Part shown: positions 7,730-37,000 of the stretch, piece after piece | Position numbering within the stretch: position 1 is the stretch's first letter | Layout of the letters: every line of letters starts with the position of its first letter | NCBI GenBank assembly: GCA_964247055.1 | Contig: OZ176051.1 | Span: forward strand, 4,402,001 to 4,466,000 | DNA: 64,000 nt | Direction of reading: 5' to 3' | From: Paragordius varius | Lineage: Eukaryota; Animalia; Nematomorpha | Position numbers and translations under genes: made by a program | The notes under the pieces: generated by a model | What the model saw: the letters and a program-made list of their open reading frames with translations, nothing else | Databases searched by the model: none | Told to the model about the DNA's origin: nothing

Positions 7730-8073
7730 TTTTTATTCAAAAATAGTTGATATTACTTTTAAGCTAAATCCGAACGGTAAAAATTTAGTCAACGTGACAT
7801 GTGTGCAATGGTAAAGTTGAAAATATTACAAAATAAACCGCTTTGTATTTTTCTATCAATGTTAGTTTGTAAAATAAAAATGGCGTCGAAGTAGTTTGAG
7901 ATGGAGCTTTTTTTAAAAACAAAATTTTATCAAGATGTTTTGGCATATTTATATAATATTTATCAGGATAGAAGCATAAATTTAAATTGGGACCGTTTCC
8001 TTCAGTCGTTTTTTAAAAATATTAATTTAAATTCAGTCTGGGGTATTTAGATACCCCAACTTGAATCGAAGTG
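7730..8073 (+). mobile_element. 5'-truncated copy of the piggyBac-like MITE
   Basis: Ends GGGGTATTTAGATACCCCAACTTGAATCGAAGTG|TTAA. Confidence 0.65.
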
Positions 8074-10174
8074 TTAAAGCGTTGCTATACCATTCACACT
8101 CAAAACACAGTGTCCACAAAAAAATCCTGATGAATTATAATGGTTTTGGCTCTTACGAGAGATTTGAGATTTCATGACCTTTTATTGTAGTCTTATATCC
8201 CAGAACGATTGGAAATTTGGATATCTTTAAAATAATTTAAGATAATAAACCGAATTTAAAAATATGATTTCTTTAGCCTTTTAGGCGCACAATACAAATT
8301 TCTAAATTATGTAAAATTGTGAAAAAATCTTTATCTCAAACATTGGCCGCCATTTTTTGTTTAAATTTTTTAAATCGCTAAAACAATAGGGAAATAAAGT
8401 ATATTATGGTTAGCAAATGTAGACACATAAACTTTAGTAAGATTTCAGGTTATTTTTTATCAGCGAAAATTGAATTTTATTTCAATCGTTTGGGAACTGT
8501 CTTAATTTTAGACGCTAGAAATTACAATATTTTAATATAAGCCTTTTTGTCTATTAAAGGCGAACAATGTTTAATAATTAAATTTAAATAAAACCCTCAA
8601 AACAGCCCTCTTTTGTGGTAACCGCTCCATATCAGAAAATAGCAAATTTTGCGCACATTTTGTAGAATAAAGTTTTTTGGTAAAACTAAATTCTCCATTC
8701 CTTAAAATATATTTATGTATAATAAGCTACGTATGAAAATTCCGAAAGTCCCAAATTTTTTTGCTCTTCTCTGAGCTACTTGTCATAAAATAATAAAAAA
8801 TCCGAGATTGAGCGATAAATATTAAATACTTTTAAAAAAAGCATATCAAAAATCTAATTAGCGAATTTTGTCGAAGCCTTCATACTATTAGCATGATGAA
8901 ACCGTATAAAAACGCTTAAAGATACTACTTTTAATTTAAAGGTGCGCTTTCTTAAAAATTTTGGTAAATTATGTAAAAATATTTTAAATATAAAGACCAA
9001 CAAATATTTAGGAAAATGAAATAAGATAATTTTTTCAGGTTACGCCTTCTCATAATTTTTAGTTCAAGAATAATCCCTAAATATCAACAGCACCATAAAT
9101 TGTAGCGAGCATAATTATTTACCCACGGAAAATGAGTCATGCCATATATCATTGGTCAAACTGCAGCCCACGAACCGGATTCGATCCTTAAATCGATTTT
9201 TCTGGTCACCTGCAAAAATAAAATTTCATCATGCAAGTCTAAATCGACTCACATCACAATATTAGGATTATATTTGGAATGTGATGAAAAAACAAAAATC
9301 TCGCCATTTTAAATAATGTGATACTTAATTAAACATATTTTTAATTTATGATTGAAAACATGTTTATTAAATCAATACACTTACTCTTATTTTTGAATTA
9401 ACGTCATTAAAAATTATGCGTGACCAATAGCGATTATTTATAAAATAAAGATCACAAACTGTATACATTACACCAGAAAATGTGACTAAATTTTCATTTA
9501 TTTCTTATCGGCACACCTTATAAAGCGCAAAAAACATGTATGATACTTAAAAAAGGATATGATGCCAGAGATTTTAAAATTGCCATAAGCAATCAACCTA
9601 AATATATTTTAAAACTAAATTGGTGTACAACTGTTTGACATATTATTTTTACGAAAGAATAATATACGCAAAATATAGTATTTATTAATGCAACGAATTA
9701 AAAGTTAAATATGGTTGGTATTATATATATATAATGGTAAAACATCCATAATATATGGCAAAACAAAATCCAAATGTATATGTATTCGTTACTATCCAAA
9801 AAATAAAAAGAATGTTGTTCGATTAAGGTAGAAATTCTTAGAGAAAAACAAAATAGTTGTGTTATGACTAAATTATTGTTGGTGTGTTAATATTCAATAA
9901 TAATAATCCAATTTGTTGTGTAAACAATTATTTATAAAAATATTAAAAATTGATCCAATATCAATAGCATACAAATCTCCAAATTTAGCCAAAAAATAAT
10001 GTAAAGAAAATATAGTTGGGTAAATCTACACAAATTTTGTCTTTAATAAACGGCGCATTGAAATTTCCAAAATATAAGATATCACATAATGGACATATGT
10101 TACGTTCAAAATCAGCATAGCCCCACGTAAAATATCTTTTGACTGACGAAAAAAATCCAAAATAACTAAAATTT

Positions 10175-11574
10175 TCAATTCCCTTGATTCCAATACAATG
10201 GTTGCCCAGAATTCAAAGAAGATCCAGTTATAGACGGTCTGTTATTGGGTGTAACTGTAAAATATAGATACATAAACTTTATTAAAAATGGTAGTCAAAA
10301 ATTAAATTAAAATGAAGTACTAATAATTTATTGTAAAATCTATATAACAAATAAACACATTATAAAAAGGTGTGGCTCTTGCTCTTTTTTAAAGATGAGT
10401 TATGATATAACAAAATAATTTTTTTATTTAATTAACAGTGTGCATGCAAGACAGCATGCAAAATTAATTCAGATGTTAAACCAAGCTTAATATAATAATT
10501 GTGTAACACCTTATGAAAAACAAATTATTTTATATATAAGCAATGGTATAATTTAATTTGTTTGCAGAAAAATATAAAAGTCATATGCATGATAACTTAA
10601 ATATCATTGTTGATCAACACATAAAATAGGTAGTGGACACATCAAACCTTGCAAAAAAATTTAAAATAGGAATAAAAACGATATTCATTTAATATGAGTA
10701 TCTTGGAGCACTATTCCCTAGATTAATTCTATAAATTTAATTAATTTTATTAATATAAGTAATGTGTATAATATTGTGTACAATTCAAATACAACAATAA
10801 AAAAGCAGTTAAAAATATTTTCAAAAAAATCATTTATTTAATAACAATTACAAATTACTTAAATCCAAATTAAACGTAACATTAATAGGAGATCACAATA
10901 TTACAAGTTCATTAACTCGTTTAAACTTATGGTGTTCTGTATTTATAAAATATAATTTTACCCTGTAATAAATATAATATATATCCGAGATTTTTTAATG
11001 TGTAAATTAATATAACGTCCAAAAAATGATGAAATAAAAAGGTAAATTTAAATATTTTTAAAATACAATAACCCTATATAAGATTAATGTAAGAAGGTAA
11101 TATACTAAAAAAATGACATAAAAATCACTAAGGTTTAATTGAGGCAAATCCATTGAATTGGGGTTTATCAATCTTTCATTCATATAAAGCCAAACTTTTC
11201 AAATATTTTTAACTTATCAATATACAATTTTTCATTATAAATAATGGAAATAATTTCAATTTTCTAAATACTCAAAAAAATAAAAGTAAGAGTAAAATAA
11301 ATGGCCAATTAAATATTTTTTCTCTGTCTCGGATAAAGTTAATTAATTTAGTTGTATAAATTACCTTTCTGGCTGTTATCATTATGAGTCAATGTAGAAG
11401 GAGGCAAACTTAAACCATTACCTGCGCTGGATGATGAAACTCCACTACTCCCAGTTCCTAAATAAAGGAAATAATAAATATATATATAAACTAAAAGAAA
11501 GAAAATAAATGTCTAAATATTTCGTACATAAACTATATTATTTAAATTTTTATATAAGTGTTTCATATATATTA

Positions 11575-13795: not shown

Positions 13796-16700
13796 TACCT
13801 TGTTACCATCGGATCCAGTTTTATTCGTAACATCTATAAAAAAATAAATTTTTAAATACTAACCAATTTAATAAAGCATCACGATTTTTAAATAAATAAA
13901 TATTTACCAGATTTAAGTCCCCCCAAAGAAGAATTCGAATTAAAGTTATGGTTGACATGCTATATAAGATATTTATAAATTAATTATTGTGGAATTATTT
14001 TATAATAAATATTTATCGCTAGAAATGTTGAAAAAAAAATAATTTACCATAGGTGGTAAAGTTCCTAATCCATTTGCTGCATTCAATGTTGCTAAAATAT
14101 ATTGTGTATAAAATCGTAAAAAAATATGATAAAAATGGGTGATGGGTATAGATTTTTTTAACATTTAAAATTCAATATCATTCATAAAATAAGGCAAAAA
14201 AGGTAAACCAATAACTATATCATAGATAAACCATGTTTCATGCAAATAAATTAAATTTTTTAATTAAAGACAACCATTCTTTATATAAGGCAACAATTTC
14301 TGTTTTGAACTAACTTTTTCATTCAAGTTTTTACTTAAACTAAAGCGTAAAAAAACCTATTTTGCCCTTTTCCAACATCGTGTTACTGATGTTATTATTG
14401 TTAGGATCCATTAAAACTGAATTCATCATGCCAGGTAAAAGTTGATTCATAAAATACGCATTATTTGGAATATTTGAGGTACTGTTTGCCCCTATAAAAT
14501 TTGTCGAAACCATATTATTAGATGGTATCAAGTTTTGATAATTACCCAAATTTAAATTTGCCATAATGGGTTGTTTGTTCGCTAAACCGGTAGATGATAC
14601 TAAAAATACAGTAAAAATGGAAAATATTTAAACATTTCATAAAAAAACAAAAACAACCATATAGTTTAAAGGTGTTGTTAATTAAGGAATCGATTGGAAT
14701 TGGTAAATCACTCAGTTTATACCATTTTGTAATTATGTTGAAAATACAATGTTTAAAAGAGCTTCAGTTTTGTCTTTTAAATATTAATTATCTAACCATA
14801 ACAATCAAGCAAGTTAAAACACTGAAAATTTAACATGCGAACATTTTTTCAAAATCAGAAAATGATGACAAAATAATGATTTAAATAAAAAGGAAGAATG
14901 AATTCCTTCTTTTGTAAAATTAAATTGGTGTGGTTTATACCATTCGTATAATTAACGTCATTTTGCTGGTGTGTAGCCAAGATTTGGGAATTATTTTGTT
15001 GATGTTGTTGTTGATTTAAGATATGTAAGGAGTTTGTAAATTGGAAAAAGTCAAGGGGGAGACATTTAAATATTTGGCAATGTTCTTCAAACGTGTATGA
15101 AGTGGGCGGTAAAGATGGACCCGATCCTGCCTCCTAATAAAACGTAATAAAATAAAATTTATGAGTATAAGGATTATTTTCTGCATAGTAAGCGATATTT
15201 ATAGAATTAGAGTTATTAAACTTGTAACAACGTAGATTTTAAAATGTTATATTTCTGTTTAATACATTTCTGAAAGAAATTGATTTAAAACGATAATGCA
15301 AAAAGTTTTTTACGTTTAATAACTTATTTAATTTTCCATTCAACTTAATATTTATCCAAAAAAATAATGTATGAAAAATTATCTTACATAAAACGATATT
15401 TGAGGTGGTATGGGTTGGCCCATCATATTATATGTTGTTTGATGTGAAGGTTGATTTTCAAGTGTCGGTATTGATTGTTGCACGGGTACAGTCATTTGTG
15501 ATTTATTGTTGTAATTTAGCTGGTTAGTTGTCGTAATCGAATTTAACGTATTTATATGGCGGCCATTATTAATATAATCATTATTTGTTGGTAATGAATT
15601 TCTTTTATCATTATTGGTATTAAACTTTGTTGGGTGGTTGTCGGTTTCCATTGTTTTTAGTACATTTTGGGGTATTTTATTGGGCTGTAGGTTCAAAGTT
15701 GTGTTGACTATAGAAAATAATGTAAATATAATAAACAGTTAAAAAATAAATCGTGTTTTTATATGTATTTAAAAGATTAATTTAATTTAAAACCACCTGA
15801 AAACCAGCTCATGGGTGTTTTAAAATGCCAAAATTTATTGAATGTATACAAAATGTTAACAAAGTATGTAAGCTTACTATCAAAAGGACCAATGCCTAAA
15901 AATGATTGAAAATCAAAAAATGAATTTTAGATTGGTAATAAATAAAAAATTGGTTAAATGGATATTTAAAGCGAAAATCACAGTTTACAAAAAAGTTTTT
16001 TTTATAAAACTTCTCGTTACTAATATGCGATATTTAAATCCGATTTATTTTAGCCATAAAAATATATGATACATAATCATTGGGGTAAATTGCGTAAAGT
16101 GTAAGTTTTATTACCGTTGTTTATAGATTCCGAATTAGCTTGCAGATTATCCTCTTTAAAATCTGTCCCAAATATTTTTCCCAATGAAATAGGTATTCTA
16201 TATTGATTATAATTAATAAATATTAAAATATAATAACTCTTTCTACACGCAAATAAAAAAATATATTACGTTGCATTTATAGGCGCTAGTACATTAGTTG
16301 TTGATATAGAAATTTTAGATTGTGAGATAGGGCGGTTGGAATTCGTCTCAGGCAAACAATCTTTTCCCGTATTACAAGCGGGTTGTCCAATATTTTTGCC
16401 ATTAGTATATTCATTTTGGTCAAATCCAAATTCATTGTTTGTTGAAATTTTTGTTGCAATTTTGCCCATTTTATTCGTTGGTGATAAAGCGTTTTTGCTT
16501 GTACTTTTTTCAACATTAATCTCATTTTCATCGTCTTCCTCATCCAAGAAAAATGAAATTCCGCTAAAATCTGAAGCAGGTACCCCAAATTCAAAATTTA
16601 TGGGTAGGGTAGGGATATGCCTGTTATTTGGCATAACCACAGGTATAGTAGGTATCTTGGAGAGGGGCGGTAACTTTGGTAGGGTATATGATGCATTTTG

Positions 16701-19277
16701 TTCCTCATTATTAACATTTACTACTTGTGTTGCTATAGAGTGTGTAATAGTGTTAGAACCTACTACTATATTAGGATTAGTATTATTGTTAAGGAGACCA
16801 ATTCCTAGGGCATTTTTAATGGTTTCAGTTGCCTTACATGATTTAAGGTATGTTGGGACACTTCCTACTACTAGAGTATTTTCAACAAATGACGAGGCTG
16901 GTTTGACGCTATTGTCATTATATTCTTTAGAATGATGATTCTTTGTACGTAATGAGTGTGTGGTATCATCCGAACTGTGAATAAAAAACAATTTTTTTTA
17001 AATACATAAAAAACCGAAATTTGTGGTTGAAAATCAATTTTTGGTGTCTAGCTCCGGTTAATTTGTGTTTAAATAGCTAAAATTCAGTTGAATTTTTTTT
17101 ACATCATACCGTGAGTATATATAGCCTAAAAATATGTATGGTGTGGTATTTTTTACCAATAAGTGTAAAAAATCTTTTAATATCAAATAAAAAGTCTATT
17201 TAAAATAGGGTCAACAGTATATTAAATATTAAAAAAAATCAAAAATTTGTACTTTTTTGGCATCGTTTTAAACCGACAATCTCTGATACCAGTTTTTATA
17301 AATTCAAAAATATTTTTTATAAAGAAAAAAAAAACATAAATAAATCTTACCTTAAAACTACACTAGATGATTGGGTCGAACTGAAGGAATCACTTTTAAA
17401 ACGCCGAAAATTTGCCGATTTATCTTGTGGTATTTGGGCCTTCCATTCTCCAATCTCATTCCAGTTGTTTTGCGTTAAATCTACATACACAAAAAAATAT
17501 ATAGGTTATCTTTACCCCCTTATCAATTTATATTTTGATTTCTTAAAAGTATCAAGAAATATTATTTAGAATGTCATCCCAATTTTGAGTTAAATTTAGT
17601 TATACACATAAAAATAGATGGTTTAAAATATATTAACTTTGGGATCATTTTGTTTATTACTTCCTAATAATTTTAAATTAGTTTCTAATTAAAAATATGG
17701 ATGATAATGGAAAGACTTAAACATCTGTAATCTTAAAGTTAAGGCGTATTTAATTTGGGGAAATGCTTAGGCCTATAATCTTTTAACATTTACAACGATT
17801 GAAAGAAAATACCCTAAAATGTATTCCAACATAAAAAATTGATATAAATATACTACCATTTTTGCTGATTGGTTCATCTGTGCCATTTTCGGGTGACTTT
17901 GATTTATAATGAAAATTATTATTTGTATTTGGATGCTGTTTGCGAAACATTGGCCGATTTCCATGGTTTGAAAAATATGCCCCACGTCCTCTGTTAACAT
18001 ATCTAACATGTGAATATTAGACGTTAAAAAGAGGAATTTATGATTAAATTATATATGAATTACGATAAATACGCATATTATATAAAAAATTACCTTTTGT
18101 TTTGATGTGTGGGATGATATGGTGGCCGTTTTTCGTCCTTTTCGTTCGACATTTTTGATTCTGTCTCGCAAAGATCTATAAAAACAATGTTTGGTTTGAT
18201 TAATTGAAATATAAATAAAGTTTTTCATAATGAAGTGCGTTCTCTATAAGGAGCTCTTATAACTAGTTTATAAAAACTTTTTTTGTTTTTAATAAAATTC
18301 TAAGTTTAAAGTTGTGGAAGTTTCTAAGTTGAATATTGTACTCATAATAATAAGAAAAAAATATTATATTAAAACTTTATTTTTATATTTTTCAAAAGAA
18401 TCATAATGTGGCCATATAAAATTAGGTTTATTTTTTTAAATAATTTTTATACTGTTGGTTTCTTGCGGAGCATTCATCCTTGAAAGTTCTGTTTTGCTCC
18501 TAAATCCATTTTGATTTCTTCTTACGGATGTTGAAAATTCCCTTGTACCTTTTGTGAATTTATGCTTTACTCTAGGAGCAAAAAATTATAAAGGTTAAAT
18601 TAAACAATAAAAATAAAGTGTAAATTTTGAAAAACTACCTAGGCTCGATTTGATCCTTTTTATCGAGTATCTGAGGGTTTTCTTTGCCATCACTTATTTC
18701 CTTTTCCGCCACATTTTTTATTACCTCCGTATTTTGGTTTTGGTTATTTTTTATATCGTCTTTTTTAAGTTTGTCGTTGGTATCTTTTTTAAAAGTGGAT
18801 TTGTCGGCTTTTTTGCTAGAATCAGAATCTCTGTCACCCTTTGTATCCCCATGAGATTTTTTCTTTTTGGTCAAGGTTTTCCATTCACTTTTCTAAAAAA
18901 TTATAATTGATAATTTACCAAGGAAGTATAACTGGTAAATGATTCAAGCAACATGTTAACTGCTCTATTTACATCATTATCGGCATCGTGTAAGGCAAAA
19001 ACAGCTTCATCGCTTGTTTTATTGGTCAACTCCATAACTTGTTTAATTTTGTTTTTAAGATTATTATCTTCATCCTTTGTTTTCCGTTCCAAATCCGTAT
19101 AAAATGCATTTTCGGTCGACTAAATTATAAATATTAATATTAAAAAATATTTTTAAATTAAATTATTTAACATTAAAGAGATATTATTCACACCTTTTTA
19201 GAAGGATAAGTATTCACCGACTTGTATGTTGACATTATTTCATGAAATTTATTAGGAACAGCGAGCAATAGGCTCAT
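10175..19277 (-). CDS. UBAP2L: UBAP2/UBAP2L/lingerer-like protein, 20 exons, about 1297 aa
   Basis: Exons: 19218-19277, 18919-19119, 18639-18892, 18453-18571, 18094-18175, 17857-18002, 17351-17480, 16270-16974, 16115-16197, 15388-15707, 14941-15133, 14357-14599, 14048-14091, 13908-13959, 13799-13833, 12864-13312, 12189-12595, 11739-11936, 11365-11457, 10175-10254. All introns are GT-AG and phase-compatible; total 3894 nt, open to TGA. Family motifs recognised from memory: UBA-like KIKQVMELTNKTSDEAVFALHDADNDVNRAVNMLLE, then EWKTLTKKKK, RGRG, VVMP..NFEFG, YTFEEHCQIFKCLPLDFF and a C-terminal LYWNQGN*. Some boundaries in the low-complexity half are less certain. Confidence 0.88.
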
Positions 19278-19416
19278 CACATTAATTAAATGATATATTT
19301 ATATATACAATATTTACAAGAATAAATGCGAATAATAATAAAAAAATTATAAACTAAAAATTAAAACAATGCACCGCCATTAATGAATGTATGTAAAACA
19401 TTAATCCATTATTTAA

Positions 19417-19967
19417 ACTTGGATTTTAGTCCTTCAATTCAAATTGGGGTAGTTAAATACCCCAGACCTGTTTATTAAATAATTTAAAAAAATAGAAGGA
19501 ATCAAAACCATGGCAAAATTTTGCACCTATATAAAATTGATAAACCGAAATATATAAAAAAATTTATTCAAAAATACTTAAATTTTTTTAATGTAAAACC
19601 CAAAGGTAGAAATTTAGTTTATGTAACATATGTGCATTGGTTAAATTGAATAATAATACAAATTAAACCTTTCTATTTGTATCAATGTTAGATGTAATTA
19701 TAATAAGAAATAAGCTTTAACTGTAAAGTTTGAATCAAATAACGTGATATTTTGCATAATAGTAAAATAAAAATGACGTCCAAGTAGTTTGACATGGAAC
19801 TTTTCTTTTTCAAAACAAAATTCTATTTAGATATTTTGGCTTTTTTATATATTATTTATTAGGATGAAAGCATAAATATAAATTGGGACAGTTTTCTTCG
19901 GTAGTTTTTTAGAAATATCGATTTTATTTTAGTTTGGGGTATTTAGATACCCCAATTTGAAACGATG
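19417..19967 (+). mobile_element. piggyBac-like MITE copy just upstream of the UBAP2L-like start (duplicate at 37372-37922)
   Basis: Same internal sequence and subterminal repeats; left TTAA intact, right end degenerate. Confidence 0.65.
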
Positions 19968-20149
19968 TTATAATATACGACAGTAAATTACATACATATA
20001 AAATTTGAAAAATAATATTATACCAAAACATAAGCTAACATTATGTTTTTCAAACATTTATTGATTACTTTTTTGCTTTTTTAAATTCTATTCTATTTTA
20101 AGAAACCTTATCAACACCATTATTTTCTCACTTTTTGTCCTGGTTTGTG

Positions 20150-23100
20150 ATTGATGTGTATAACACCCAAAACCTGAATATTGTCAACATAGTCATTATT
20201 ATCAAACATTGCATGTATTAGATATAAAAGCTAATATTTGTACGGTTTTGTGTAGAGATTAAAAATGGGGCAGCTCCAAAACACGATAGAAACGAACATC
20301 TAATATTGAAATATAATATATCAAATTTTTCTTTTAAAATGTAGCTTGAAATTATTAGATTATTTACATTTTTAATCTCCATACACATTTATTTGCCTGT
20401 TGCATTAGAAATATAAAATTTGTGGAAAAAAAGGCGGCAAAAAGGTTATCGGGATTTTTAGTTATAAATTAAAAAAATATTTTTTGTATAATGCGCCTAA
20501 AGGTTAAAAAAGCATGTTTTTTCATTTAAATATCTTTACTTTTTGGAATATTCAAACTTCATATCGCTTTGGTATATAATTTAACCTTAATATTCCATTA
20601 CCTTTGGGGGTATACAGAGCGATTTTATGTTTGAATATCCCAAAAATATTTTTGGTATATATCAAATTAGAAACATGCTTACTTTAGCCTTTTAGGTGAT
20701 AAAATAATTTTCACTTAAAAATGTAAATTTTAAAAAAATCAGCACTTTTTTGCCGCCATTTCAATTTTATAAAATCAACATAGCCACAAGGATATTATTA
20801 TGGTTAGAATTTATAAATAATTAACTTTAAAGAGCTTTCAGGCTACATTTTTCGGAAAGATTTTAATATCGGATGCTCCTTTCAATCGTGTTTTGGAGAT
20901 GTTCCAATTTTAGACTCTAGTCACTAAAATAACATTTAAAACAGTTGTTTGTTTACATATTGACCTTTGGGATATAAAAACTGCCCTTATAAGGTAAACA
21001 AGGACAAAAAATTAAAAGGTAATGTAGTGCTAAATGATAATGGAGTGTTAAAATCAAAAATAAATTATATTTTTTATTTGAGATTATTTAACACTTCGTT
21101 TCCTTTTGGAGTAGTTTTAAAAGCGAATATTGAATTTTTAAAATTAATTAAGGTATTCCTTTGTTTTAACACTTGGATATAACACATTCATTTTATTCAT
21201 CCGATTCAAATTGGGGTAGTTGGATACCTCGATCCTGTTTAAAATTAAATACTCCAAAAAACATGGATTGGAAACCATGGCATTTTATGAATGAAAATAT
21301 AATTAAAAATCATTGGAAAATATTTGATATTACTTATTTTAGGGTAAAACCCAAATGTTAAAAATTAGTCAACATGACATGTGTGCATTACAAAATTTAA
21401 AAAATAATATAAAATACACCACTTTTTCTATTTCTATAATGTTAGTGAATTAAATAAAATTGGCTTAAAATTTAGCTTTAAAATTAAATAAACTAGATAT
21501 TTTGCAAGAACATATTTACATTTCTATTTTTTCATACTTTGCAATTTTAAACAAAAATGGCGTCCTTTTTTACAAAACTAAATTTTATTTAAATATTTTG
21601 GCTTATTTATATAATTTTCATCAGGATAGAAGCATAAATTTAAAATGGGCCTGTTTTTTTATTACTTTTAATATTTCGTCTAGGGTATTTAGGTACCTCA
21701 ATTTGAACTGAAGTGTTAAAACTGGTTTTTTAGCTTTTGCGCATTATACAAAAAATTTAAAACAAAGTAAAATTGTAAAAAATCCTCATCTCAAATTTTT
21801 CCGCCATTTTTTTCTATTAATTTTTTTAACACTTCCCTACCTTTTCATATTTTGTCCTAATTTACATTTTGTTTAGTTTTATATCCCAAAGCTCAAAATT
21901 ATAGTTGTAAAAGTTATTTTGTTAAAATTTAATTATCAAACAGTTCTTATGTTTAAGATAAAAAAATTACGGTTTTGTGACTTCAATAGTCTGTAGGACA
22001 GCTCCAAACGATTGAAACTAACAGATGATATTAAAATCATAATATATCAAGTTTTTGCTGGTAATATGTGGCATGTATTTTTAAAGTTAATTATTTACAT
22101 TCAGTAACCATAATTTACATTTATATTCCTGTTGCATTCGCGATTTAAAAAATTTATAGAAAAAAATAGCATCAATAAGATGATGATTTTTTTACAATTT
22201 TACTTTTTTTAAACAATTTTTAGTATAATACGCCTATAAAGCTAAAGAGGGCATATGTTAAATTAGGCTTAATATCTTAAATACTTTTTACGATATTCAA
22301 ATTTCAAATCGCTTTGGGATATAAAACCAACTCAAAGGGTATTGGAATGTTACAATCGCTAATACAGGCAAATTTATTGTTAGAAAATGTAAATAATTAA
22401 CATTAATTGATTTCAGGCTATATTTTACCAGCAAAAACTTGATACATATTAATTTTAATATCAGCTAATCGTTTGAATCGTGTTTTCGAGTTGTCCCAAT
22501 TTTAGACTCCAGAATTCCCAAAATTAAAATATAAGCATTGTTATCTAATACATTAAATGTTTGATAATTAAATTTTAACTAAAATAACCTTTAAAACTGT
22601 AGTTTATTTACAAAATTGAGCTATGGGATATAAAGCTACACCAATATGTAAACTAGGGTAAAAAAGTTTATAGGTAATAAAGTGTTGTATTATGGGTTAG
22701 TCCTTATCATTTTAAAAAATTGTTTCTGAGCAATAGTAAATAATTTAATTGGTCATTCTTTTTCACAGTAACAAATATATTCCTATTTGCAAAACACTTG
22801 ACAGGATAAATTCACCGGTATTGAACTGGCTAAGGTTATAGAATGCATGTTAACATACATACCCAACAAAAAATAATATTGAAATAACACTTAACCTTTT
22901 AATTTATTTTAATTGATCACCTTTTGGGGTATTTTTGTACTCCAAAGGTGAATTTGTATAACTATTGTTTTAATGGGTTTTGATAAATTTTATTGATTAA
23001 CATTGTCTCTTGTATTTTAGATAAGAAAGCTTATATTTTTACAGTTTCCAAATTATAGTGTACCAAATCTGGATCCCAGATTAAAACAAACCGCTCATTG

Positions 23101-23430
23101 TAAAATAAATATGAAGTATTTGCTAATAAAATGCAAATAAAAAGTCAAAACTTACACAACTTTTTACCATGATCCATTTATTTGCTGTTGCATAGCGATT
23201 TTGAATAATCCAAAAAGGCAGTCCAAAGTTTGAGATGAGGATATTTTTCAATTTTAGATATTGTAAAAAAAATCAGGCGCCCAAAAGGCTAAAGAATGCA
23301 TACTTTTAAATTTGAGCCAATATCAATACCTTTGATGTAGACTTCACCCCAAAACGATTTTGTTTTCGAATAAATTCATGTTTCTTTTGAACCTTTTGGC
23401 TACGAGATCACATTTTTTGGAATATTTACC
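20150..23430. repeat. Cluster of a dispersed repeat family (GCGCCCAAAAGGCTAAAG / CAGCTCCAAAACACGAT motifs) in both orientations; also at about 6600-7090, 8200-8600, 30200-30530, 31200-31540 and 32110-32520
   Basis: Multiple diverged copies visible by eye; element ends not resolved. Confidence 0.55.
21170..21715 (+). mobile_element. TTAA-flanked piggyBac-like MITE, type copy (duplicate at 39125-39670)
   Basis: TTAA|CACTT...AAGTG|TTAA. Subterminal inverted repeat GATTCAAATTGGGGTA..AATACC separated from the ends by asymmetric spacers. Confidence 0.75.
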
Positions 23431-23434
23431 TTAT

Positions 23435-24761
23435 TGTTAATTTGATGAGAAGATAATATAAGAAACGTGAAATGATTTTAATTCGGTTTTTTTTGTGGTT
23501 TATATATACTAATTTTAGGTGTACATTTGCATTATAACAATAAAATTTCAAGTAACAAAGGATATATTATTTACATAGTACCAAAAAATATAAAAATAAT
23601 ACAATTCAAATCTCACAAAAATTATGATATACAACCAAAGTATATATTTCATATTTGCATGTAACATCAAATCTCACAGAAAATTATGATATACAACCAA
23701 AGTATATACTTCAAATTTGCATGTAACATCACTTCACTCTTAGGGGAAATAATACTAGTTTGAATGATAATACATGTTTTGGGTGTGTCGACGAATGTTT
23801 GCATAAGGTACATCATAGTTTGAAAGATAACATCACGTGTTGTGTGTCGACGAATCATTTAATCTATGCCTCACTCCATCCTGGACCATTTCTTGTTAAA
23901 CTGGTCCAGTCGCACTGAAATATTATCGGCGCTGTGGGGAATCTGAACGATCTCCTTTTGTAACGGCAAATCCTCTTTGCATTGAAATCGTAGAGGGGTG
24001 TAGCGACTCTTTAGCTCGGCCTGGGGAGGTAGGCGTACTGATCAATCTTGTTAAAAGCTTGTCCGCGCCAATCTAACTTACCCAACCATCAAATGTTGAA
24101 TGATGTGGGAGTCCTCCGCAGCCATTTGTTGATAATGATCCCAGAGTCGCTATAGATTCTTAGCCCGTTCGCTTTCAGTGCACTGGCGGTTGAACATATT
24201 TTTGGCAGTGTTTTTTAATCTACATTAGCGAATTGGTTGGGTTTTCCGCATTTGCAATTGCGGTTCCAGGCGGGACATTTGCTTGGCCCATGAACACTCC
24301 CATAACCCTTGCGCGAATGTGTCAGAGGTTTTGATTGTTGTGATCGATTATAATTATTACCATTGCTATAATTGGTATTATCATTATATTTTTTTTTGAT
24401 GGACATTTTGGTGATATTGGCAATTGACATTGTCATGCTTGTTGCACTTTCTCTCCGAGTTTGGAACCCGGTGGTGTTATGTTAGATTTGTTGTTAGATT
24501 AGTTCGGATTCGCTTGGCTACTAGATGTTAATTTGAAAAGAAGAAAATATAAGAAACGTGAAATGATTTTTATTCGGTTTTTTTGTGGTTTATATATACT
24601 AATTTTAGGTGTACATAATTTGCATTATAACAATAAAATTTCAAGTAACAAAGGATATAATATTTACATAGTACCAAAAAAATATAAAAATAATACAATT
24701 CAAATCTCACAAAAAATTATGATATACAACCAAAGTATATATTTCAAATTTGCATGTAACA
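23435..24761 (-). mobile_element. Internally deleted Ty3/Gypsy-type LTR retrotransposon, 1327 bp (duplicate at 41390-42716)
   Basis: Direct-repeat LTRs at 24526-24761 and 23435-23728 with TGTTA...TAACA ends. Perfect 5-bp TSD CTTAT (23430-34, 24762-66). PBS-like TAGTAGCCAAGCG after the 5' LTR and polypurine AAGAGTGAAGTGA before the 3' LTR. Gag-type knuckle remnant SKCPAWNRNCKCGKPNQFA. Confidence 0.85.
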
Positions 24762-25939
24762 CTTATCAAGTAATATTTATCATAAATACACAAATTTAAT
24801 AAAGTTTCTCTATTTTTAATATGTCAAATTTTATTTATCATAAATTGTATCCACAAAAATATCCTGATATATACAGTATGCATTTTAATGGTTGCCTATT
24901 TCACACGATAGTAGGGTTTGTAACACAGGAGTTTATGGAAAAAATAAAGGAAATAATTGTTTGTTCAACATTTTGTTGTTTTTTTCCATACACTAATGAA
25001 TTGAAAATTGCCCTACGATAGTGTGCAATAAAAACCATTAAAATGCTAAATGTATATTCTGATAGAGAAATATATCAGTTTCATGATGCTTTTGGTGTGA
25101 TTTAGGGAAGTTATTTATACGTTTGTGGTAAGTGCTCCATATCAGTAAATGGCGAAATTTGCGACATTTTTTTAAAACAATTTTTTTTGGTGAAAGCTAA
25201 ATGTTTTTTTACAAAAAATATCACTAAGATATACAGAGCAAAAAAACCTGTTAACGTATATATTTTATAACAGGAAGATGTATTTGGATTATCATGGTGC
25301 TTTTGTGGCCCTTACTAGTTATATAAAAAAGTTATTTACACTTTTGTGATGCTCATCAGAAAATGGCAAATGCAGATTTTCTTAATATTTTTTTAGTAAA
25401 AATTTCCAAAAAATACTATATAACATAAGTAAAAAAATTTTCAAAAAATTTAATTTTTAAATGGGTGCTTAGAAAGTCCCAGATTTTGCTCTTGTAAAAT
25501 GGGCTAGTTCTCTATAAACACAAAAATGCCGGGTATTAGCGATATAAATTCTAAATATATGGTAAAAACTAAAAATTTAGAAAATGATTACTTTTTTCAA
25601 ATATTTAATTTTTAGCAAAATTTCATTCAAGCCTACTTGCTAGTTTGAGGCATGCTGGAAACAAAACGGTTTAAGATATTATAAAATACTTTTTCTATAT
25701 AATTAAATGATGCTGAAAATTTCTAAATTCGTTCGTCTTTAAATTTATGTAAAATATAAACTGTGTTTTCTACTCAACAAAAATGAATAAAATGCATTGT
25801 CAAAGCTAAAACCATCCCATGAATGTAATAGGCTCCGATCACTATTTTGTGACAATTAAAATTAAGTTTAGGTTGAAAGCTAAATTACACCAAAAATGTA
25901 ATAAGCATTTTGACTTTTCCAAGTGAATAATGAATTTAA

Positions 25940-27510
25940 ATACTATTCTTCCAGATAATATAGATTATCTGGACGCCAACGACCACTGGCTTAGGACCAT
26001 AACAGCAATCAATGAACTGATTCTCATTTCCCACTTTATAGAAAACATCCCAACATTTTGAATTGTATGATTCTCTTGTTTTAGCTACCAAAAGCAGATT
26101 AGTCAAAATAAATAACAATATTACTGAATACCGGTATATACTCGCAATTCAAAAGATAATCCAGAAATGACATCAATGTTGACTATCTTGCGATTTGTAA
26201 GACTTAAAACTTGCTAATTCTAAAGGCGAGAATATATAGGAAAAAGTACATTTGTTAGTCCTTTTCAACTCCCTCAATCTGCAGGGCATCAGCGATTCCG
26301 ACAACGTAATATTAACAAAAAAACATGATGTAATTAAACTTTGGGATAAATTTGGAGCTTTTCTTTATTGTGATGACCAAACTAACCAAATTCATCCTCA
26401 AGATAATACATAAACGAATTTCAACCATGCTTGATTGTGAAATTTCTGTTGTACAAGCTAGCCTAGCGAAACACTACAAATCACATAGATAATAGTTATA
26501 TTATAATTCAGAGATATAAATTCGGAAGTTAATACTGCTGTTTTTTGGGCTCCAGTATGGCATTAGACACAGTTAACGAGAATAGAAGATTTTATAATCT
26601 TCCGGAGTTTTCTCTCATATAATTCTTTGGTTGCAATCGTGTTATTCCCAAACAGCTGCTATCAAAACACAATACGGTCCCACCGACTGGCTCCCTATAA
26701 TATTGTTAGAGAGATATGCGCCTTACTCACCTGTTCAACTTATACACTAAATCTTTAATGTGCAATTGTAAACTTTCCAAACATAATGCAGGGCGCATCT
26801 GATGTTTTACTCTTCGCAATCTCCGGTACGCCGACGATACGGTTTTTTTGATAGAATCACACCCGGAAATGATTTATTACTACCGTCGAAGCAATTTTGA
26901 TGGGTCAGAAGCTAGCTATAAATATATTATCCTCAACGTCCCCAGTTACCATTATCGCTCAATTCCTCCTCTATCGAAACCGATACTACAAGTATTTAGG
27001 TATAATTGAATCGACGGCAGTTTAGATCCCAACACAGGCTGTTTATAATTGGAACTCCTCTGTCACAAGAGTTTCAACCAAAGTAGCCATTCTAATGGTG
27101 ATAGTTTACCCAGTCGCTATTTACGGGTCTGAATCATGGGGATGTAAATCTACCGACGAAGCCCGCATTAACTCATTTCAACTGTGGTGCTTCCGGAAAG
27201 TTTTGGTATCTCCTGGACTATGATTAATATATACTTCCTCGAACCAGAATTTTGGCTTTATGATCTGGTAATCTACAGACATATAAATCTCGGCCATTTT
27301 CTAAGATCCGATTCTCTTTAAAAAACATTCTCCTTGGGTCGATTGTACTCGCAAAAAAGGCGGCCCTAAAAAGAGCTGGCTCGATATCCTAAAATCAGTT
27401 ACAAACCTTACCTTTTTCCAAACAATTCGAAAATCTCAAGATCGTATGGAATGGAAAACGCTTATTTGAGAGAAAGCTAAGAGTCGCTGCGCGACTAGAT
27501 TCTAGCATAC
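25940..27510 (+). mobile_element. Decayed, 5'-truncated RTE-clade (BovB-like) LINE (duplicate at about 43895-45465)
   Basis: Frameshifted RT motifs in the expected order: AAIKTQYGPTDW, LFNLYT, LRYADDT (YADD at 26827-26838), YKYLG, VYPVAIYGSESW, FQLWCFRKVL, QDRMEWK..KAKSR. The 5' boundary is approximate. Confidence 0.85.
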
Positions 27511-27780
27511 ACAGATAGCTAAAAGCTTAGAATAATAATTAATAATGTAATGAAAATTTCGTAAAACTTTATAGGCAAAATTATTTATTATAACTTGGAT
27601 TGCATTTTCTTGCACATTACATAAAATAATAATTTAGGTAAAGAAAAACGCTTCTATTTTGTTAAGAGCACAGATTATCTTGCATAGAATTTTTTAAAAT
27701 GATATATTGATATTCAAATTACCAAAATTTTTTATTTCTTACGCATAATGCATTTTGAGTCTATTATTATTGAACATGAC

Positions 27781-28073
27781 CAGGGGTGTCCAACACGCGG
27801 TCTGTAGGCCGCATACCGCCCTCCAATATGTGCGGCCCGCGAAAAATTTCTAAATTAAATAAATACAAAATTTTGCAAAAATATGCTGATAAATATCAGT
27901 AAAATTGATATTTTTTGAACGAATCGGAATAAGTCCTATCGATTGGCAAAGAACTAGAAAAAAATTGGAGTAAATAGTACTTATATTGTGTTTGCCTTTT
28001 CACAGTTTTATGTCAAAAAATTATTAATGACCATATATTTTTCTAAGCGGCCCCGATGAGTTGGACACCCCTG
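27781..28073. mobile_element. hAT-like MITE (duplicate at 45736-46028)
   Basis: Perfect 14-bp TIR CAGGGGTGTCCAAC...GTTGGACACCCCTG with internal GCGGCCC motifs; TSD not preserved. Confidence 0.75.
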
Positions 28074-30534
28074 ATGAAAACTATGATATTAGAGCGCAAA
28101 AATTAGTTTAGCATTTCGTGCGCAAAGTAAGTAAAATAGCAAAAGACCCCTTATACAAAAAGTAAACATAAAATGTTACACTCACATATAATTATTCAAG
28201 CCAATTAATAAAATTATATTATTAGCTATACTTAAACGAATTTGGGGGCTATATAAAAAAATTTTAGTACAAAATATAAAGAAGCCAGCCTTTTGTTTTA
28301 GTAGTTAATGACAAAGAAAAAAAATTAACCTATGATATTGTGCTTTTTGTTGGGATATAATTTACCCAAATGTTATCCGTTAAAAATTACATAGTTTATA
28401 AATATATAAGTTCTTTATTAATAATTATAAACTAATCATAATGACTTTTGCAATTAGAAAATATTAAAATGTTTAAGATTAAAAATTTATAATGATATAG
28501 GTATAAAAATAAATTACATTGCCGATATAAAATCAAAAAATTGGCAGATTTCAGAAGGTCTTCTTTCAAATGCATGGATAGGGGGGGCGTACCAATAACT
28601 ACTGTTACTTTTCAAGAACTTTGCGATGGAGATCCAATTTCTTTTACATGGTTTCTTAACCCTAATTTAAATTGATTATACCTTTTTGAAATGTTTTATA
28701 ACTTTTAAATAATTGGTGAAACAGGCACAGAGCACAATTTTCTTTAAAGCAGCTTTCCAATTTATGTCCATATATTTATGATAAATCGTTTCACTTACGT
28801 TTTAAAATACAAGAAATGAACTGTGTCAACTTGATGTTTGTTTTTTACAAATAATGTAATGCGTTATTAGGTGCATTAAATAAAATATTCAAAAATTTTA
28901 GCATAATATAAATGGAGATTATCTAATTAATGTGCTTCTCATCTTAAAATAATCGAAAAAAACCGCGATTTGGCATGAAAAATTTAAATATGTGAATTTT
29001 TCCCTATTAATTAAATAAGAATATGAATATGATTAAGTAAAAGGCGGGCGGAAAAAACTATAACCGGCGTAACCAATTATAATCATTAAAGTTAACACCA
29101 TAGACAGAATTTTTTACGCTTGCTCACCAAATCAGGCCTTCTTGCAAAAAAAGGCATTCAAAATGACGAACTGTGTCGAATATTCGGAAGTGGCCAATAT
29201 ACAGTGGTGGATCTACGGGGAGGATTATCTAAAAATACCAGTATATAAGCAAACAGAAAATTACAATAATTGCCATTCTGAACACAACTAACACAGTGTC
29301 TACAAATAAATAGGCTGATGAAATATATATATTCGGATAGGAAAATGTATCAGGACTATCATGGTCCGTTTAGTTTACCATTTTAAGAGTGATTTAAGAA
29401 AGTTTTTTACCCTTTTGTGGTAAATGCGCCATATCAAAAATTAGCAAAATCTGCGCACATTGTTCAAAATAAAATATTTTCGGTAAAAGGTAGAGGCTTC
29501 ATTCCAAAAAATATCATTAAAATATATAATAAACTATATTTAAAAAGCAAAACAATATATTTTAGGTTTTAGTTTTTAGGGCTCCAAAAGTTTCACATTT
29601 TTTTGCTTTGTTATTTCTTATAAAATAAACGCATGAATTTAAATAATATGGTAAATTTTGATAGCATAGTTTTATTTATAACTTTTATTACTAGTAAAAT
29701 TTTGTTGTACATACTTCACACATTTTTAAGCCATACGCGTTAAGATATTATGAAAACAACTTGTCTATATAAATCGGTAATGCTGAACATTTATATCACC
29801 TGAGAATTTCGTCTTCAAATTTATGTCAAATACAAATTGTGTTTTTTTTTCAAAATAAAATTTTAAGACAAAACCTTTAATTTTGGAGTGATAGAAATGT
29901 TCAGTGTCATCAAAGTATATAGAAAAATTTAATATCTTAAGTGACGTAGGCTGTAACATTGTTGAAAATTAAATTTTCAAAAAATTAATTTTTGAAAAAT
30001 ATATTTTTGATATTTAGCATATATTTAAAATTTTAATCGGGCGATTTCGGTTTTTGGCTCATATTTAAAGAAAGTCAACTATCTGATGGAAAAATAAAAA
30101 AATTTTTATTATGTTTTTTATTTGTAATTTATGATATATTTTAGTGATATTCTTTGGAATGAGGCATTTAGTTTTCACCAAAAAATATACACTTCCTTAG
30201 CTTTTTACTATATTGTCCTAGTTTATATATTGGGGTAGTTTTGTATACCAGAGCTTAATTTTGAGATAAACTGCAGTTTTGAAAGCTATTATAGTTAATA
30301 TTTAATAAATCGTTCTCAAATATTAGATAAAAATGTTTTACTTTTTACAGCTTTGTGACTTCTAGATTATAAAACTGGAATAGCTAAACACGATTATAAC
30401 GAACAGTTGATATTTAACAAGCTATAAAAAAATTTATCGAAAAAAATTGCGGCAAATAGTTTGTATAATTTTTCATTTTTTTGAAATTTTTTTTTTGGAT
30501 AACGCGCCCAAAAGGCTAAAGAAAGTATATCAAA

Positions 30535-31105: not shown

Positions 31106-31543
31106 TTAATTCGGCTTTATACCTTAAATACTATTTAAAATATTTAAATTTCGAAGCTCCACGATATAATAAAAGAAAATAGAGTGTTAAATAAATGTCA
31201 AATGCCAGTATCTAAGATAGAGCAGCTACCACTAAAGTGTAAATAACTTTCTTGAATCACTAGTAGGGGCCAAAATAAAAAGCACTATAATCCAATATAT
31301 TTTTCTTCAGAATATATATTACCGGAGTATTTTTTGTGGAGTACCATTATCTCTTCATTCTTTTTAAAGATCCAAAGCCTTCAAATATAATTAAATCTTT
31401 TGTAATAGTCGTAACACTTAATGACCTTTTGGAGTAGTTTTATATCCCAGAGCGATTCGAAATCTTCTCAATATCTAAAAAAGTATTTGTATTATGCCGA
31501 ATCCAAAAATATGCTTTCTTCAGCTTTTAAGACACATGCTTAA

Positions 31544-33791: not shown

Positions 33792-33800
33792 GTCAATATT

Positions 33801-34069: not shown

Positions 34070-37000
34070 CGTTGTTTATAGATTCCGAATTAGCTTGCAG
34101 ATTATCCTCTTTAAAATCTGTCCCAAATATTTTTCCCAATGAAATAGGTATTCTATATTGATTATAATTAATAAATATTAAAATATAATAACTCTTTCTA
34201 CACGCAAATAAAAAAATATATTACGTTGCATTTATAGGCGCTAGTACATTAGTTGTTGATATAGAAATTTTAGATTGTGAGATAGGGCGGTTGGAATTCG
34301 TCTCAGGCAAACAATCTTTTCCCGTATTACAAGCGGGTTGTCCAATATTTTTGCCATTAGTATATTCATTTTGGTCAAATCCAAATTCATTGTTTGTTGA
34401 AATTTTTGTTGCAATTTTGCCCATTTTATTCGTTGGTGATAAAGCGTTTTTGCTTGTACTTTTTTCAACATTAATCTCATTTTCATCGTCTTCCTCATCC
34501 AAGAAAAATGAAATTCCGCTAAAATCTGAAGCAGGTACCCCAAATTCAAAATTTATGGGTAGGGTAGGGATATGCCTGTTATTTGGCATAACCACAGGTA
34601 TAGTAGGTATCTTGGAGAGGGGCGGTAACTTTGGTAGGGTATATGATGCATTTTGTTCCTCATTATTAACATTTACTACTTGTGTTGCTATAGAGTGTGT
34701 AATAGTGTTAGAACCTACTACTATATTAGGATTAGTATTATTGTTAAGGAGACCAATTCCTAGGGCATTTTTAATGGTTTCAGTTGCCTTACATGATTTA
34801 AGGTATGTTGGGACACTTCCTACTACTAGAGTATTTTCAACAAATGACGAGGCTGGTTTGACGCTATTGTCATTATATTCTTTAGAATGATGATTCTTTG
34901 TACGTAATGAGTGTGTGGTATCATCCGAACTGTGAATAAAAAACAATTTTTTTTAAATACATAAAAAACCGAAATTTGTGGTTGAAAATCAATTTTTGGT
35001 GTCTAGCTCCGGTTAATTTGTGTTTAAATAGCTAAAATTCAGTTGAATTTTTTTTACATCATACCGTGAGTATATATAGCCTAAAAATATGTATGGTGTG
35101 GTATTTTTTACCAATAAGTGTAAAAAATCTTTTAATATCAAATAAAAAGTCTATTTAAAATAGGGTCAACAGTATATTAAATATTAAAAAAAATCAAAAA
35201 TTTGTACTTTTTTGGCATCGTTTTAAACCGACAATCTCTGATACCAGTTTTTATAAATTCAAAAATATTTTTTATAAAGAAAAAAAAAACATAAATAAAT
35301 CTTACCTTAAAACTACACTAGATGATTGGGTCGAACTGAAGGAATCACTTTTAAAACGCCGAAAATTTGCCGATTTATCTTGTGGTATTTGGGCCTTCCA
35401 TTCTCCAATCTCATTCCAGTTGTTTTGCGTTAAATCTACATACACAAAAAAATATATAGGTTATCTTTACCCCCTTATCAATTTATATTTTGATTTCTTA
35501 AAAGTATCAAGAAATATTATTTAGAATGTCATCCCAATTTTGAGTTAAATTTAGTTATACACATAAAAATAGATGGTTTAAAATATATTAACTTTGGGAT
35601 CATTTTGTTTATTACTTCCTAATAATTTTAAATTAGTTTCTAATTAAAAATATGGATGATAATGGAAAGACTTAAACATCTGTAATCTTAAAGTTAAGGC
35701 GTATTTAATTTGGGGAAATGCTTAGGCCTATAATCTTTTAACATTTACAACGATTGAAAGAAAATACCCTAAAATGTATTCCAACATAAAAAATTGATAT
35801 AAATATACTACCATTTTTGCTGATTGGTTCATCTGTGCCATTTTCGGGTGACTTTGATTTATAATGAAAATTATTATTTGTATTTGGATGCTGTTTGCGA
35901 AACATTGGCCGATTTCCATGGTTTGAAAAATATGCCCCACGTCCTCTGTTAACATATCTAACATGTGAATATTAGACGTTAAAAAGAGGAATTTATGATT
36001 AAATTATATATGAATTACGATAAATACGCATATTATATAAAAAATTACCTTTTGTTTTGATGTGTGGGATGATATGGTGGCCGTTTTTCGTCCTTTTCGT
36101 TCGACATTTTTGATTCTGTCTCGCAAAGATCTATAAAAACAATGTTTGGTTTGATTAATTGAAATATAAATAAAGTTTTTCATAATGAAGTGCGTTCTCT
36201 ATAAGGAGCTCTTATAACTAGTTTATAAAAACTTTTTTTGTTTTTAATAAAATTCTAAGTTTAAAGTTGTGGAAGTTTCTAAGTTGAATATTGTACTCAT
36301 AATAATAAGAAAAAAATATTATATTAAAACTTTATTTTTATATTTTTCAAAAGAATCATAATGTGGCCATATAAAATTAGGTTTATTTTTTTAAATAATT
36401 TTTATACTGTTGGTTTCTTGCGGAGCATTCATCCTTGAAAGTTCTGTTTTGCTCCTAAATCCATTTTGATTTCTTCTTACGGATGTTGAAAATTCCCTTG
36501 TACCTTTTGTGAATTTATGCTTTACTCTAGGAGCAAAAAATTATAAAGGTTAAATTAAACAATAAAAATAAAGTGTAAATTTTGAAAAACTACCTAGGCT
36601 CGATTTGATCCTTTTTATCGAGTATCTGAGGGTTTTCTTTGCCATCACTTATTTCCTTTTCCGCCACATTTTTTATTACCTCCGTATTTTGGTTTTGGTT
36701 ATTTTTTATATCGTCTTTTTTAAGTTTGTCGTTGGTATCTTTTTTAAAAGTGGATTTGTCGGCTTTTTTGCTAGAATCAGAATCTCTGTCACCCTTTGTA
36801 TCCCCATGAGATTTTTTCTTTTTGGTCAAGGTTTTCCATTCACTTTTCTAAAAAATTATAATTGATAATTTACCAAGGAAGTATAACTGGTAAATGATTC
36901 AAGCAACATGTTAACTGCTCTATTTACATCATTATCGGCATCGTGTAAGGCAAAAACAGCTTCATCGCTTGTTTTATTGGTCAACTCCATAACTTGTTTA

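What the first reader, a model, noticed from the sequence alone, without database searches (positions are those of the whole stretch)
18893..18918. 26-nt intron directly after the UBA-like domain of the UBAP2L-like gene
Seen (minus strand): ...MLLESFTSYTSL|GTAAATTATCAATTATAATTTTTTAG|KSEWKTLTKKKK. The intron is frameshifting and contains an in-frame TAA. The nearest upstream phase-0 donors (GCA|GTTAAC, GAT|GTAAAT) would delete conserved VNRAVNMLLE residues. Established: in UBAP2/UBAP2L the UBA domain is followed after a few residues by a (S/E)W..V.KKK motif, which the spliced product reproduces. This is a second ultra-short intron, in a different gene (duplicate at 36848-36873).
Basis: partly seen in the sequence, partly recalled or inferred. 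Interest (0 to 1): 0.75.

Follow-up and report, generated by a model that had tools for sequence, protein, structure and literature searches.

The report
26-base intron in a hairworm-like gene
A conserved animal gene (UBAP2L/Lingerer type) in this AT-rich genome, whose closest match is a horsehair worm, is almost certainly interrupted by a real intron only 26 bases long, at the codon where a related horsehair worm has a 43-base intron; RNA proof could not be obtained.

Summary
On the minus strand, 18918-18893 is a 26-nt GTAAAT...TTTTTTAG stretch. It shifts the frame and carries an in-frame TAA.

The exon before it encodes a UBA domain (PDB 1wj7, E 2e-10; Pfam UBA_4 above cut-off). The exon after it starts KSEWKTLTKKKK. 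That matches the W...KKK motif found 6-11 residues after the UBA in 42 of 45 long UBAP2/UBAP2L/Lingerer relatives.

Four GT-AG pairs keep the frame (26, 65, 68 and 80 nt). Only the 26-nt pair keeps UBA helix 3, whose codons differ from the Gordionus (horsehair worm) ortholog mostly by synonymous changes.

The annotated Gordionus gene has a 43-nt GTAAAT intron at the same codon (...HTF|QNEWK against ...TSL|KSEWK). An arthropod-like contig has a phase-0 donor a few residues after the same LLE motif.

Verdict: a genuine U2-type intron (about 0.88). It is one of this genome's 20-30-nt introns; such sizes are published for only two other animal groups. This scan has noted the class many times elsewhere in this genome.

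The "duplicate" at 36848-36873 is most likely an assembly redundancy, not a second gene.

The parts
18893..18918 (-). The 26-nt intron (intron 2), phase 0. It has a 5' GTAAAT, a T6 tract and a 3' AG, with an in-frame TAA at 18903-18901.
   Evidence: position shared with Gordionus
18919..19119 (-). Exon 2 (67 codons): linker plus the complete UBA domain, ending ...NMLLESFTSYTSL.
   Evidence: Pfam UBA_4 9.6e-6, above cut-off; PDB 1wj7_A E 2.2e-10, query 16-59 to chain 35-78; 175 relatives
18639..18892 (-). Exon 3 (84 codons + 2 nt). It starts KSEWKTLTKKKK and is a lysine-rich linker.
   Evidence: on its own it aligns directly after the UBA in P0019, P0077, P0040, P0057 and P0139
18572..18638 (-). 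Intron 3, 67 nt, GTAGTT...CTCCTAG, phase 2. Inferred from frames only.
19120..19193 (-). Intron 1, 74 nt, GTGTGA...ATTTAG, phase 0.
   Evidence: Gordionus has a 44-nt intron at about the same place
19194..19277 (-). Exon 1, from ATG 19277-19275: MSLLLAVPNKFHEIM... (28 codons).
   Evidence: resembles the Gordionus isoform start MSLLLAIPNKYNTM...
18971..18972 (-). Upstream cryptic donor GAT|GTAAAT inside the V-N codons of UBA helix 3. With the same acceptor it would make an 80-nt intron.
   Evidence: the matching donor is used in annotated Gordionus isoforms P0152 and P0154
16269..16997 (-). Large central exon of the same gene (...LPKLPPLSKIPTIPVVMPNN...FEFG...). It is collinear with the central region of UBAP2/Lingerer relatives.
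   Evidence: blastp to P0001 E 1e-15 and to other long hits 1e-6 to 1e-4
36848..36873 (-). The same 26 nt in the redundant block 34001-51755.

Best explanation
Bases 18918-18893 (minus strand) are a genuine U2-type GT-AG spliceosomal intron of 26 nt, phase 0. It is the second intron of the single-copy UBAP2L/Lingerer ortholog of an AT-rich animal genome whose closest match is the horsehair worm Gordionus. Removing it joins the end of the UBA-domain exon (...NMLLESFTSYTSL) to KSEWKTLTKKKK. This restores the frame and the conserved post-UBA motif. Shown: the sequence, the frames, the homology of both flanking exons and the shared intron position. Inferred: the 5' GUAAAU pairs with U1 and U6; one of the A residues in UCAAUUAUAA (8-16 nt before the AG) serves as branch point; the U6 tract plus AG is the 3' site. 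Also inferred: the intron is an ancestral intron shrunk to below 30 nt in this lineage (43 nt in Gordionus).
For: (1) Sequence and frames. (2) The upstream exon is a UBAP2L-type UBA domain: Pfam UBA_4 above cut-off; PDB 1wj7_A E 2.2e-10, with the alignment ending at ...LLE; 175 relatives, named Lingerer or UBAP2 where names exist. (3) In 42 of 45 relatives of 450 aa or more, W...[KR]3 follows the UBA after 6-11 residues. The downstream exon alone aligns directly after the UBA in five long relatives, for example UBA to 59-103 and next exon to 107-158 in P0019. (4) Only the 26-nt GT-AG pair keeps the frame and both motifs. (5) The Gordionus ortholog locus L033 has ...CATACTTTT|GTAAAT(43 nt)TATAG|CAAAATGAATGGAAA. 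Ours has ...ACTTCCTTG|GTAAAT(26 nt)TTTTAG|AAAAGTGAATGGAAA. Both are phase 0 and lie three codons before the W. That genome's published annotation used RNA-seq alignments in BRAKER (10.1101/2023.06.26.546503). (6) Helix 3, between the cryptic upstream donor and the 26-nt donor, differs from Gordionus by 4 synonymous and 2 conservative changes. The UBA core overall has 16 synonymous against 5 non-synonymous changes, so it is translated. (7) The gene is single-copy, and its later exons are collinear with the ortholog. (8) Candidates of 20-28 nt with the same GTA...TAG form lie between coding-looking exons elsewhere in this genome. One has an ECH_1 profile starting at residue 1 of the next exon; another has an Aa_trans profile ending at the last residue of an exon. 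(9) Introns under 30 nt are documented to be spliced in other animals (PMC13644364).
Against: There is no RNA evidence. No listed run is on record as RNA. No transcript-derived or annotated protein of this genome was found. The downstream exon is low-complexity, and its matches taken alone are weak (E about 0.002 in a 159-protein set; no PDB hit). A cryptic donor 54 nt upstream is used in annotated isoforms of the ortholog, so part of the transcripts may be spliced differently. My genome-sample statistics could not show an excess of short GT-AG gaps over controls.
Confidence: 0.88

Rival explanations
1. The gene is spliced only from an upstream donor (GAT|GTAAAT at 18972, GCA|GTTAAC at 18960 or CAT|GTTGCT at 18952). 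That would give an ordinary-sized intron of 80, 68 or 65 nt, and the 26-nt form would never be used.
For: All three keep the frame. The 80-nt equivalent is annotated as isoforms P0152 and P0154 in Gordionus. Introns of 58-110 nt are common in this genome.
Against: These forms delete UBA helix 3 (VNRAVNMLLE), which is conserved from vertebrates to this genome. Helix 3 differs from Gordionus mainly by synonymous changes. That pattern is not expected of sequence that is always intronic.
Confidence: 0.05
2. There is no intron. The frameshift and the TAA are assembly errors, or this gene copy is a decaying pseudogene.
For: The region sits in an assembly with local redundancy and N gaps. The raw reads could not be inspected.
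Against: Two separate defects (a stop and a 2-nt shift) would have to fall exactly inside a stretch with consensus GTAAAT and T6AG ends, at the codon where the ortholog has an intron. The gene is the only copy. Exon 1, the UBA domain, the central exon and later exons are intact and collinear with the ortholog.
Confidence: 0.04
3. The 26-nt intron is real but poorly spliced. Most transcripts keep it and give a roughly 100-residue UBA-only product ending ...SLVNYQL, or are degraded.
For: Very short microsporidian introns are reported to splice with a median efficiency of about 25%, as cited in PMC13644364.
Against: Nothing here measures efficiency. The downstream exons are conserved with the ortholog, so full-length protein must be made.
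Confidence: 0.03

Closest known systems
Ultra-short (<30 nt) spliceosomal introns of myxobolid myxozoans and Dicyema japonicum (PMC13644364, Mol Biol Evol 2026; Lu et al. 2019 as cited there)
   Same: Length 20-30 nt, GT-AG ends, a 5' signal little beyond GTA, A residues a few bases before the AG, high A+T, and positions shared with longer introns of other animals.
   Different: The host genome matches a horsehair worm best, not a cnidarian or a dicyemid. Here the tiny introns sit beside introns of 58-600 nt and more, rather than being the median size. This one has a clear T6 tract, whereas the paper reports the polypyrimidine tract as missing or extremely short.
The orthologous intron in Gordionus sp. 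m RMFG-2023 UBAP2L-like gene (L033:2339-2381; XP_065313435.1 / CAK9293052.1)
   Same: Same codon position and phase, same GTAAAT start, same following exon sequence (GAATGGAAA), and the same cryptic upstream donor in the V-N codons.
   Different: It is 43 nt, and the other five short 5' introns of that gene are 43-46 nt. Here the intron is 26 nt.
UBAP2 / UBAP2L / Lingerer proteins (PDB 1wj7 UBA domain; Pfam PF28540 UBA_UBAP2 on the Gordionus product)
   Same: N-terminal UBA domain, W...KKK motif, one RGRG motif read in the frame translation, a central ...LPKLP..IP...VVMP...FEFG block, and an N/Q-rich tail.
   Different: The linker between the UBA and W is 12 residues, against 6-11 in the relatives. 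The local Pfam copy gave no hit for the central exon.

Membership tests
U2-type GT-AG spliceosomal intron | GT at the 5' end and AG at the 3' end | tested here: met
   GTAAAT...TTTTTTAG
U2-type GT-AG spliceosomal intron | Removal restores one open frame that encodes a conserved, contiguous protein | tested here: met
   Frames. The flanking exons align to adjacent parts of relatives. The exons were tested separately and were not joined in any tool.
U2-type GT-AG spliceosomal intron | Intron position shared with orthologs | tested here: met
   Gordionus has a 43-nt intron at the same codon and phase. The arthropod-like contig L034 has a phase-0 GTATGT donor five residues after the same LLE motif; its downstream exon was not in the contig, so closeness to one codon is inferred from spliced relatives.
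U2-type GT-AG spliceosomal intron | Excised from RNA | not testable with these tools
No run is on record as RNA.
U2-type GT-AG spliceosomal intron | Branch-point A and pyrimidine tract before the AG | tested here: inconclusive
   A T6 tract is present. Several A residues lie 8-16 nt before the AG (TCAATTATAA), but none can be assigned without lariat data.
Animal ultra-short intron class (<30 nt) | Length under 30 nt | tested here: met
   26 nt
Animal ultra-short intron class (<30 nt) | Part of a genome-wide class, not a single oddity | tested here: inconclusive
   Six further candidates of 20-28 nt lie in 200 kb of the same chromosome, two with partial Pfam support. My control statistics had no power. 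Earlier notes of this scan report the class, but I did not test them.
UBAP2/UBAP2L/Lingerer (host gene) | N-terminal UBAP2-type UBA domain | tested here: met
   PDB 1wj7_A E 2.2e-10; Pfam UBA_4; best relatives are named Lingerer or UBAP2.
UBAP2/UBAP2L/Lingerer (host gene) | Central UBAP2/Lig region and collinear C-terminal part | tested here: met
   Central exon against P0001 E 1e-15, and against P0092, P0150, P0100 and P0011 about 1e-6. Collinear HSPs with the Gordionus protein. No Pfam hit in the local copy.

The most novel reading that the evidence does not exclude
Horsehair worms, or at least this lineage of them, are a third animal lineage in which ancestral introns at conserved positions were compressed below the supposed 30-nt floor. 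Here the change is 43 nt in Gordionus to 26 nt. The rest of the genome keeps ordinary and long introns, so one spliceosome handles introns of 20 nt up to ordinary and long sizes within the same genes. A cryptic in-codon donor then offers a built-in switch that removes UBA helix 3.
Probability: 0.7. Interest if true: 0.65.

Novelty: new member of a known kind. Interest (0 to 1): 0.5.

Why it matters
Introns under 30 nt were long held to be absent from animals. As of 2026 they are published only for myxobolid cnidarians and a dicyemid (PMC13644364). This case is clean: a single-copy conserved gene, an intron position shared with a related worm that has a 43-nt intron, and a genome that also keeps ordinary introns. 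It bears on the minimum length the animal spliceosome can handle. It also has a practical side: gene finders and read aligners with a minimum intron length above about 20-30 nt would break this gene at the UBA domain.

Tried and rejected
Intron 1, which overlaps them, is described only and from my own scripts, which read the window file as a whole for frame statistics. My local tblastn was cut at 19132.

(2) Word search with the UBA exon found no candidates. A search with the Gordionus N-terminus returned only Gordionus itself. So no annotated or transcript-derived protein of this genome was found.

(3) The downstream exon alone against PDB gave no hit.

(4) I made three attempts to show a genome-sample excess of short frame-bridging GT-AG gaps over permuted-signal controls. 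These were ORF-bridging counts and dinucleotide enrichment at closed junctions. Controls were as frequent as GT-AG, so these tests have no power and support nothing.

(5) Pfam on single short exons flanking other tiny candidates was mostly too weak.

(6) The PDB search for the exon before the 21-nt cathepsin B candidate gave nothing.

Each exon was searched by reference only.

Considered and rejected: ribosomal frameshifting or readthrough, which would need both a TAA bypass and a 2-nt shift; and two separate genes, since the orthologs are contiguous across the junction.

Full report
**What is there**

The window is 25-27% G+C. On the minus strand, 18918-18893 reads GTAAATTATCAATTATAATTTTTTAG (26 nt, 88% A+T). 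The upstream stop-free frame (19119-18919) ends ...DADNDVNRAVNMLLESFTSYTSL. It would run on as V N Y Q L and then stop at TAA. The downstream frame starts at 18892 with KSEWKTLTKKKK, right after the TAG that ends the 26 nt.

**The host gene**

- The upstream exon hits Pfam UBA_4 above its cut-off (9.6e-6). GIP1_N falls just below its cut-off.
- It matches PDB 1wj7_A at E 2.2e-10. The entry is titled a hypothetical protein (RSGI RUH-015); by my reading of the aligned sequence it is a UBAP2L-type UBA domain. The alignment runs to ...LLE.
- An exhaustive profile search found 175 relatives. Those that carry names are Lingerer or ubiquitin-associated protein 2.
- The best relative is an unnamed product of Gordionus sp. 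m RMFG-2023, a horsehair worm, at 69% identity.
- Its longest isoform, P0151, starts MSLLLAIPNKYNTM.... The window has ATG 19277 followed by MSLLLAVPNKFHEIM....
- The large exon 16997-16269 and later exons are collinear with the Gordionus protein (E 1e-15, 3e-8).
- The gene occurs once in the 110.6-Mb assembly, apart from the redundant block described below.

**Is a join needed, and which one?**

Among relatives of 450 aa or more, 42 of 45 carry W...[KR]3 between 6 and 11 residues after the last UBA helix. Examples are ...LLEGNSDTTSWETVGGKKK and ...LLEGEAQGEWETSGKKKK. The downstream exon supplies exactly this motif (SEWKTLTKKKK). Searched on its own, it aligns to the residues directly after the UBA in five long relatives. 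In P0019, for example, the UBA exon aligns to 59-103 and the next exon to 107-158.

One search lists every GT and AG in the stretch. Frame-keeping pairs give introns of 26, 65, 68 and 80 nt. Only the 26-nt pair keeps helix 3 (VNRAVNMLLE).

Helix 3 is clearly translated. Against Gordionus, its ten codons show four synonymous and two conservative changes. The UBA core as a whole shows 16 synonymous against 5 non-synonymous differences.

**Orthologous intron**

I fetched the Gordionus locus (L033) and mapped its protein exactly.
- Its exon 2 ends ...SSVHTF and its exon 3 starts QNEWKTT.
- They are separated by a 43-nt intron that starts GTAAAT and ends TATAG.
- The window has ...SYTSL | 26 nt starting GTAAAT | KSEWKTL.
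- Both are phase 0 and lie three codons before the tryptophan. The exon sequence GAATGGAAA follows in both.

The six short 5' introns of the Gordionus gene are 43-46 nt, followed by one of about 11.6 kb. That genome was annotated with RNA-seq alignments in BRAKER (10.1101/2023.06.26.546503). I could not see the reads themselves.

Many short database proteins read ...EG..Q|V... or ...SDT|V... and then diverge. This pattern suggests a phase-0 intron about two codons before the W in arthropods and vertebrates. One such contig, L034, shows GGCCAG|GTATGT at that point. Its downstream exon was not in the contig. The position is therefore probably old, and it agrees with ours to within one codon of an alignable but length-variable linker.

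**A possible switch**

Two annotated Gordionus isoforms (P0152, P0154) use a donor inside the V-N codons (GAT|GTAAAT) and skip helix 3. The same cryptic donor exists here at 18972 and would give the 80-nt form. Whether it is used here is unknown.

**Context in this genome**

Ordinary introns here are longer:
- about 65 to 600 nt in the cathepsin B gene of this window;
- about 58-110 nt in actin genes;
- 74 and 67 nt on either side of the 26-nt intron.

In 200 kb of the same chromosome I found further 20-28-nt GTA...TAG candidates between coding-looking exons. For a 20-nt candidate, the next exon starts at ECH_1 profile position 18. For a 28-nt candidate, the preceding exon ends at Aa_trans profile position 47. 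This support is only partial. My three statistical surveys had no power.

**What is known**

PMC13644364 (Mol Biol Evol, Sept 2026) shows introns under 30 nt in myxobolid myxozoans and Dicyema japonicum only, among 51 animal genomes. It reports 5' signals reduced to GTa and weakly conserved A residues before the AG. I found no paper on intron size in horsehair worms. One preprint gives 200-300 Mb for the nematomorph genomes studied so far. This assembly is 110.6 Mb, so the exact organism remains open.

Earlier notes of this scan describe the same class of tiny introns many times in this genome and also point to a horsehair worm. I treat those as leads. The ortholog comparison here is my own.

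**Limits**

No RNA or raw-read evidence was obtained. I kept those letters out of all later search tools. Intron 1 overlaps them and is described only.

**Assembly redundancy**

The second copy at 36848-36873 lies in a block (34001-51755) that matches 16046-33800 with one mismatch. Bases 1-678 equal 15368-16045, and both junctions are 200-N gaps. The left part of the inserted piece recurs 15,367 bases upstream at 100% identity. The simplest reading is a redundant 32.9-kb contig placed inside its own copy, not a gene duplication.

**Verdict**

This is a real 26-nt U2-type intron (confidence about 0.88). It is one member of an ultra-short intron class in a lineage where that class is not yet published.

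Noticed in passing
window 1-678, 679-878 (N), 879-33800, 33801-34000 (N), 34001-51755: A 32.9-kb piece flanked by two 200-N gaps repeats its surroundings. 16046-33800 equals 34001-51755 (one mismatch at 21093), 15368-16045 equals 1-678, and 9000-10200 recurs 15,367 bases upstream of itself at 100%. It is most likely a redundant contig or haplotig scaffolded into its own copy, so genes here look duplicated.
   Followed up: yes
window 50842-53358 (+), also 32887-33800 in the redundant copy: A cathepsin B gene (PDB cathepsin B chains, E down to 1e-15 for the exon ending GSCGSCW). It has introns of about 65-600 nt and a candidate 21-nt intron at 50989-51009 with an in-frame TAA. The exon before that candidate gave no Pfam or PDB hit, so I could not confirm it.
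   Followed up: partly
L033:2288 (Gordionus) and window 18972 (-): A cryptic donor GTAAAT formed by the V-N codons of UBA helix 3 is used in two annotated Gordionus isoforms, giving a protein without helix 3. The same donor is present in this genome.
   Followed up: partly
L025:3167-3186, L016:7809-7830 and 8060-8087, L015:3843-3865 and 4026-4050, L013:1875-1898 (all G000:C2, 5.60-5.85 Mb): Further candidate introns of 20-28 nt (GTA...TAG, A+T-rich) lie between coding-looking exons. The genes include an enoyl-CoA hydratase-like gene and an amino-acid transporter-like gene.
   Followed up: partly
L033:2100-3544 (Gordionus): Six 5' introns of the Gordionus ortholog fall in a tight 43-46-nt range and are followed by an intron of about 11.6 kb. 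This suggests a minimal-intron class of about 44 nt in that species.
   Followed up: partly
window 21164-21670 vs 31601-32111 (inverted, 72%); 6102-6492 vs 56916-57329 (inverted, 84%); 7866-8075 vs 30533-30746 (inverted, 88%); 23435-23666 vs 24526-24761 (direct, 95%): Dispersed repeat copies, probably transposon fragments, lie in the intergenic parts of the window.
   Followed up: no
window 53432-53495 and 52280-52330: Long (TA)n-type runs that read as self-complementary repeats.
   Followed up: no
G000:C2:5809830-5811066, C5:4294960-4296473, C2:12953803-12955386: Three conventional actin genes with exon gaps of about 58-110 nt, useful as a picture of ordinary intron sizes in this genome.
   Followed up: no
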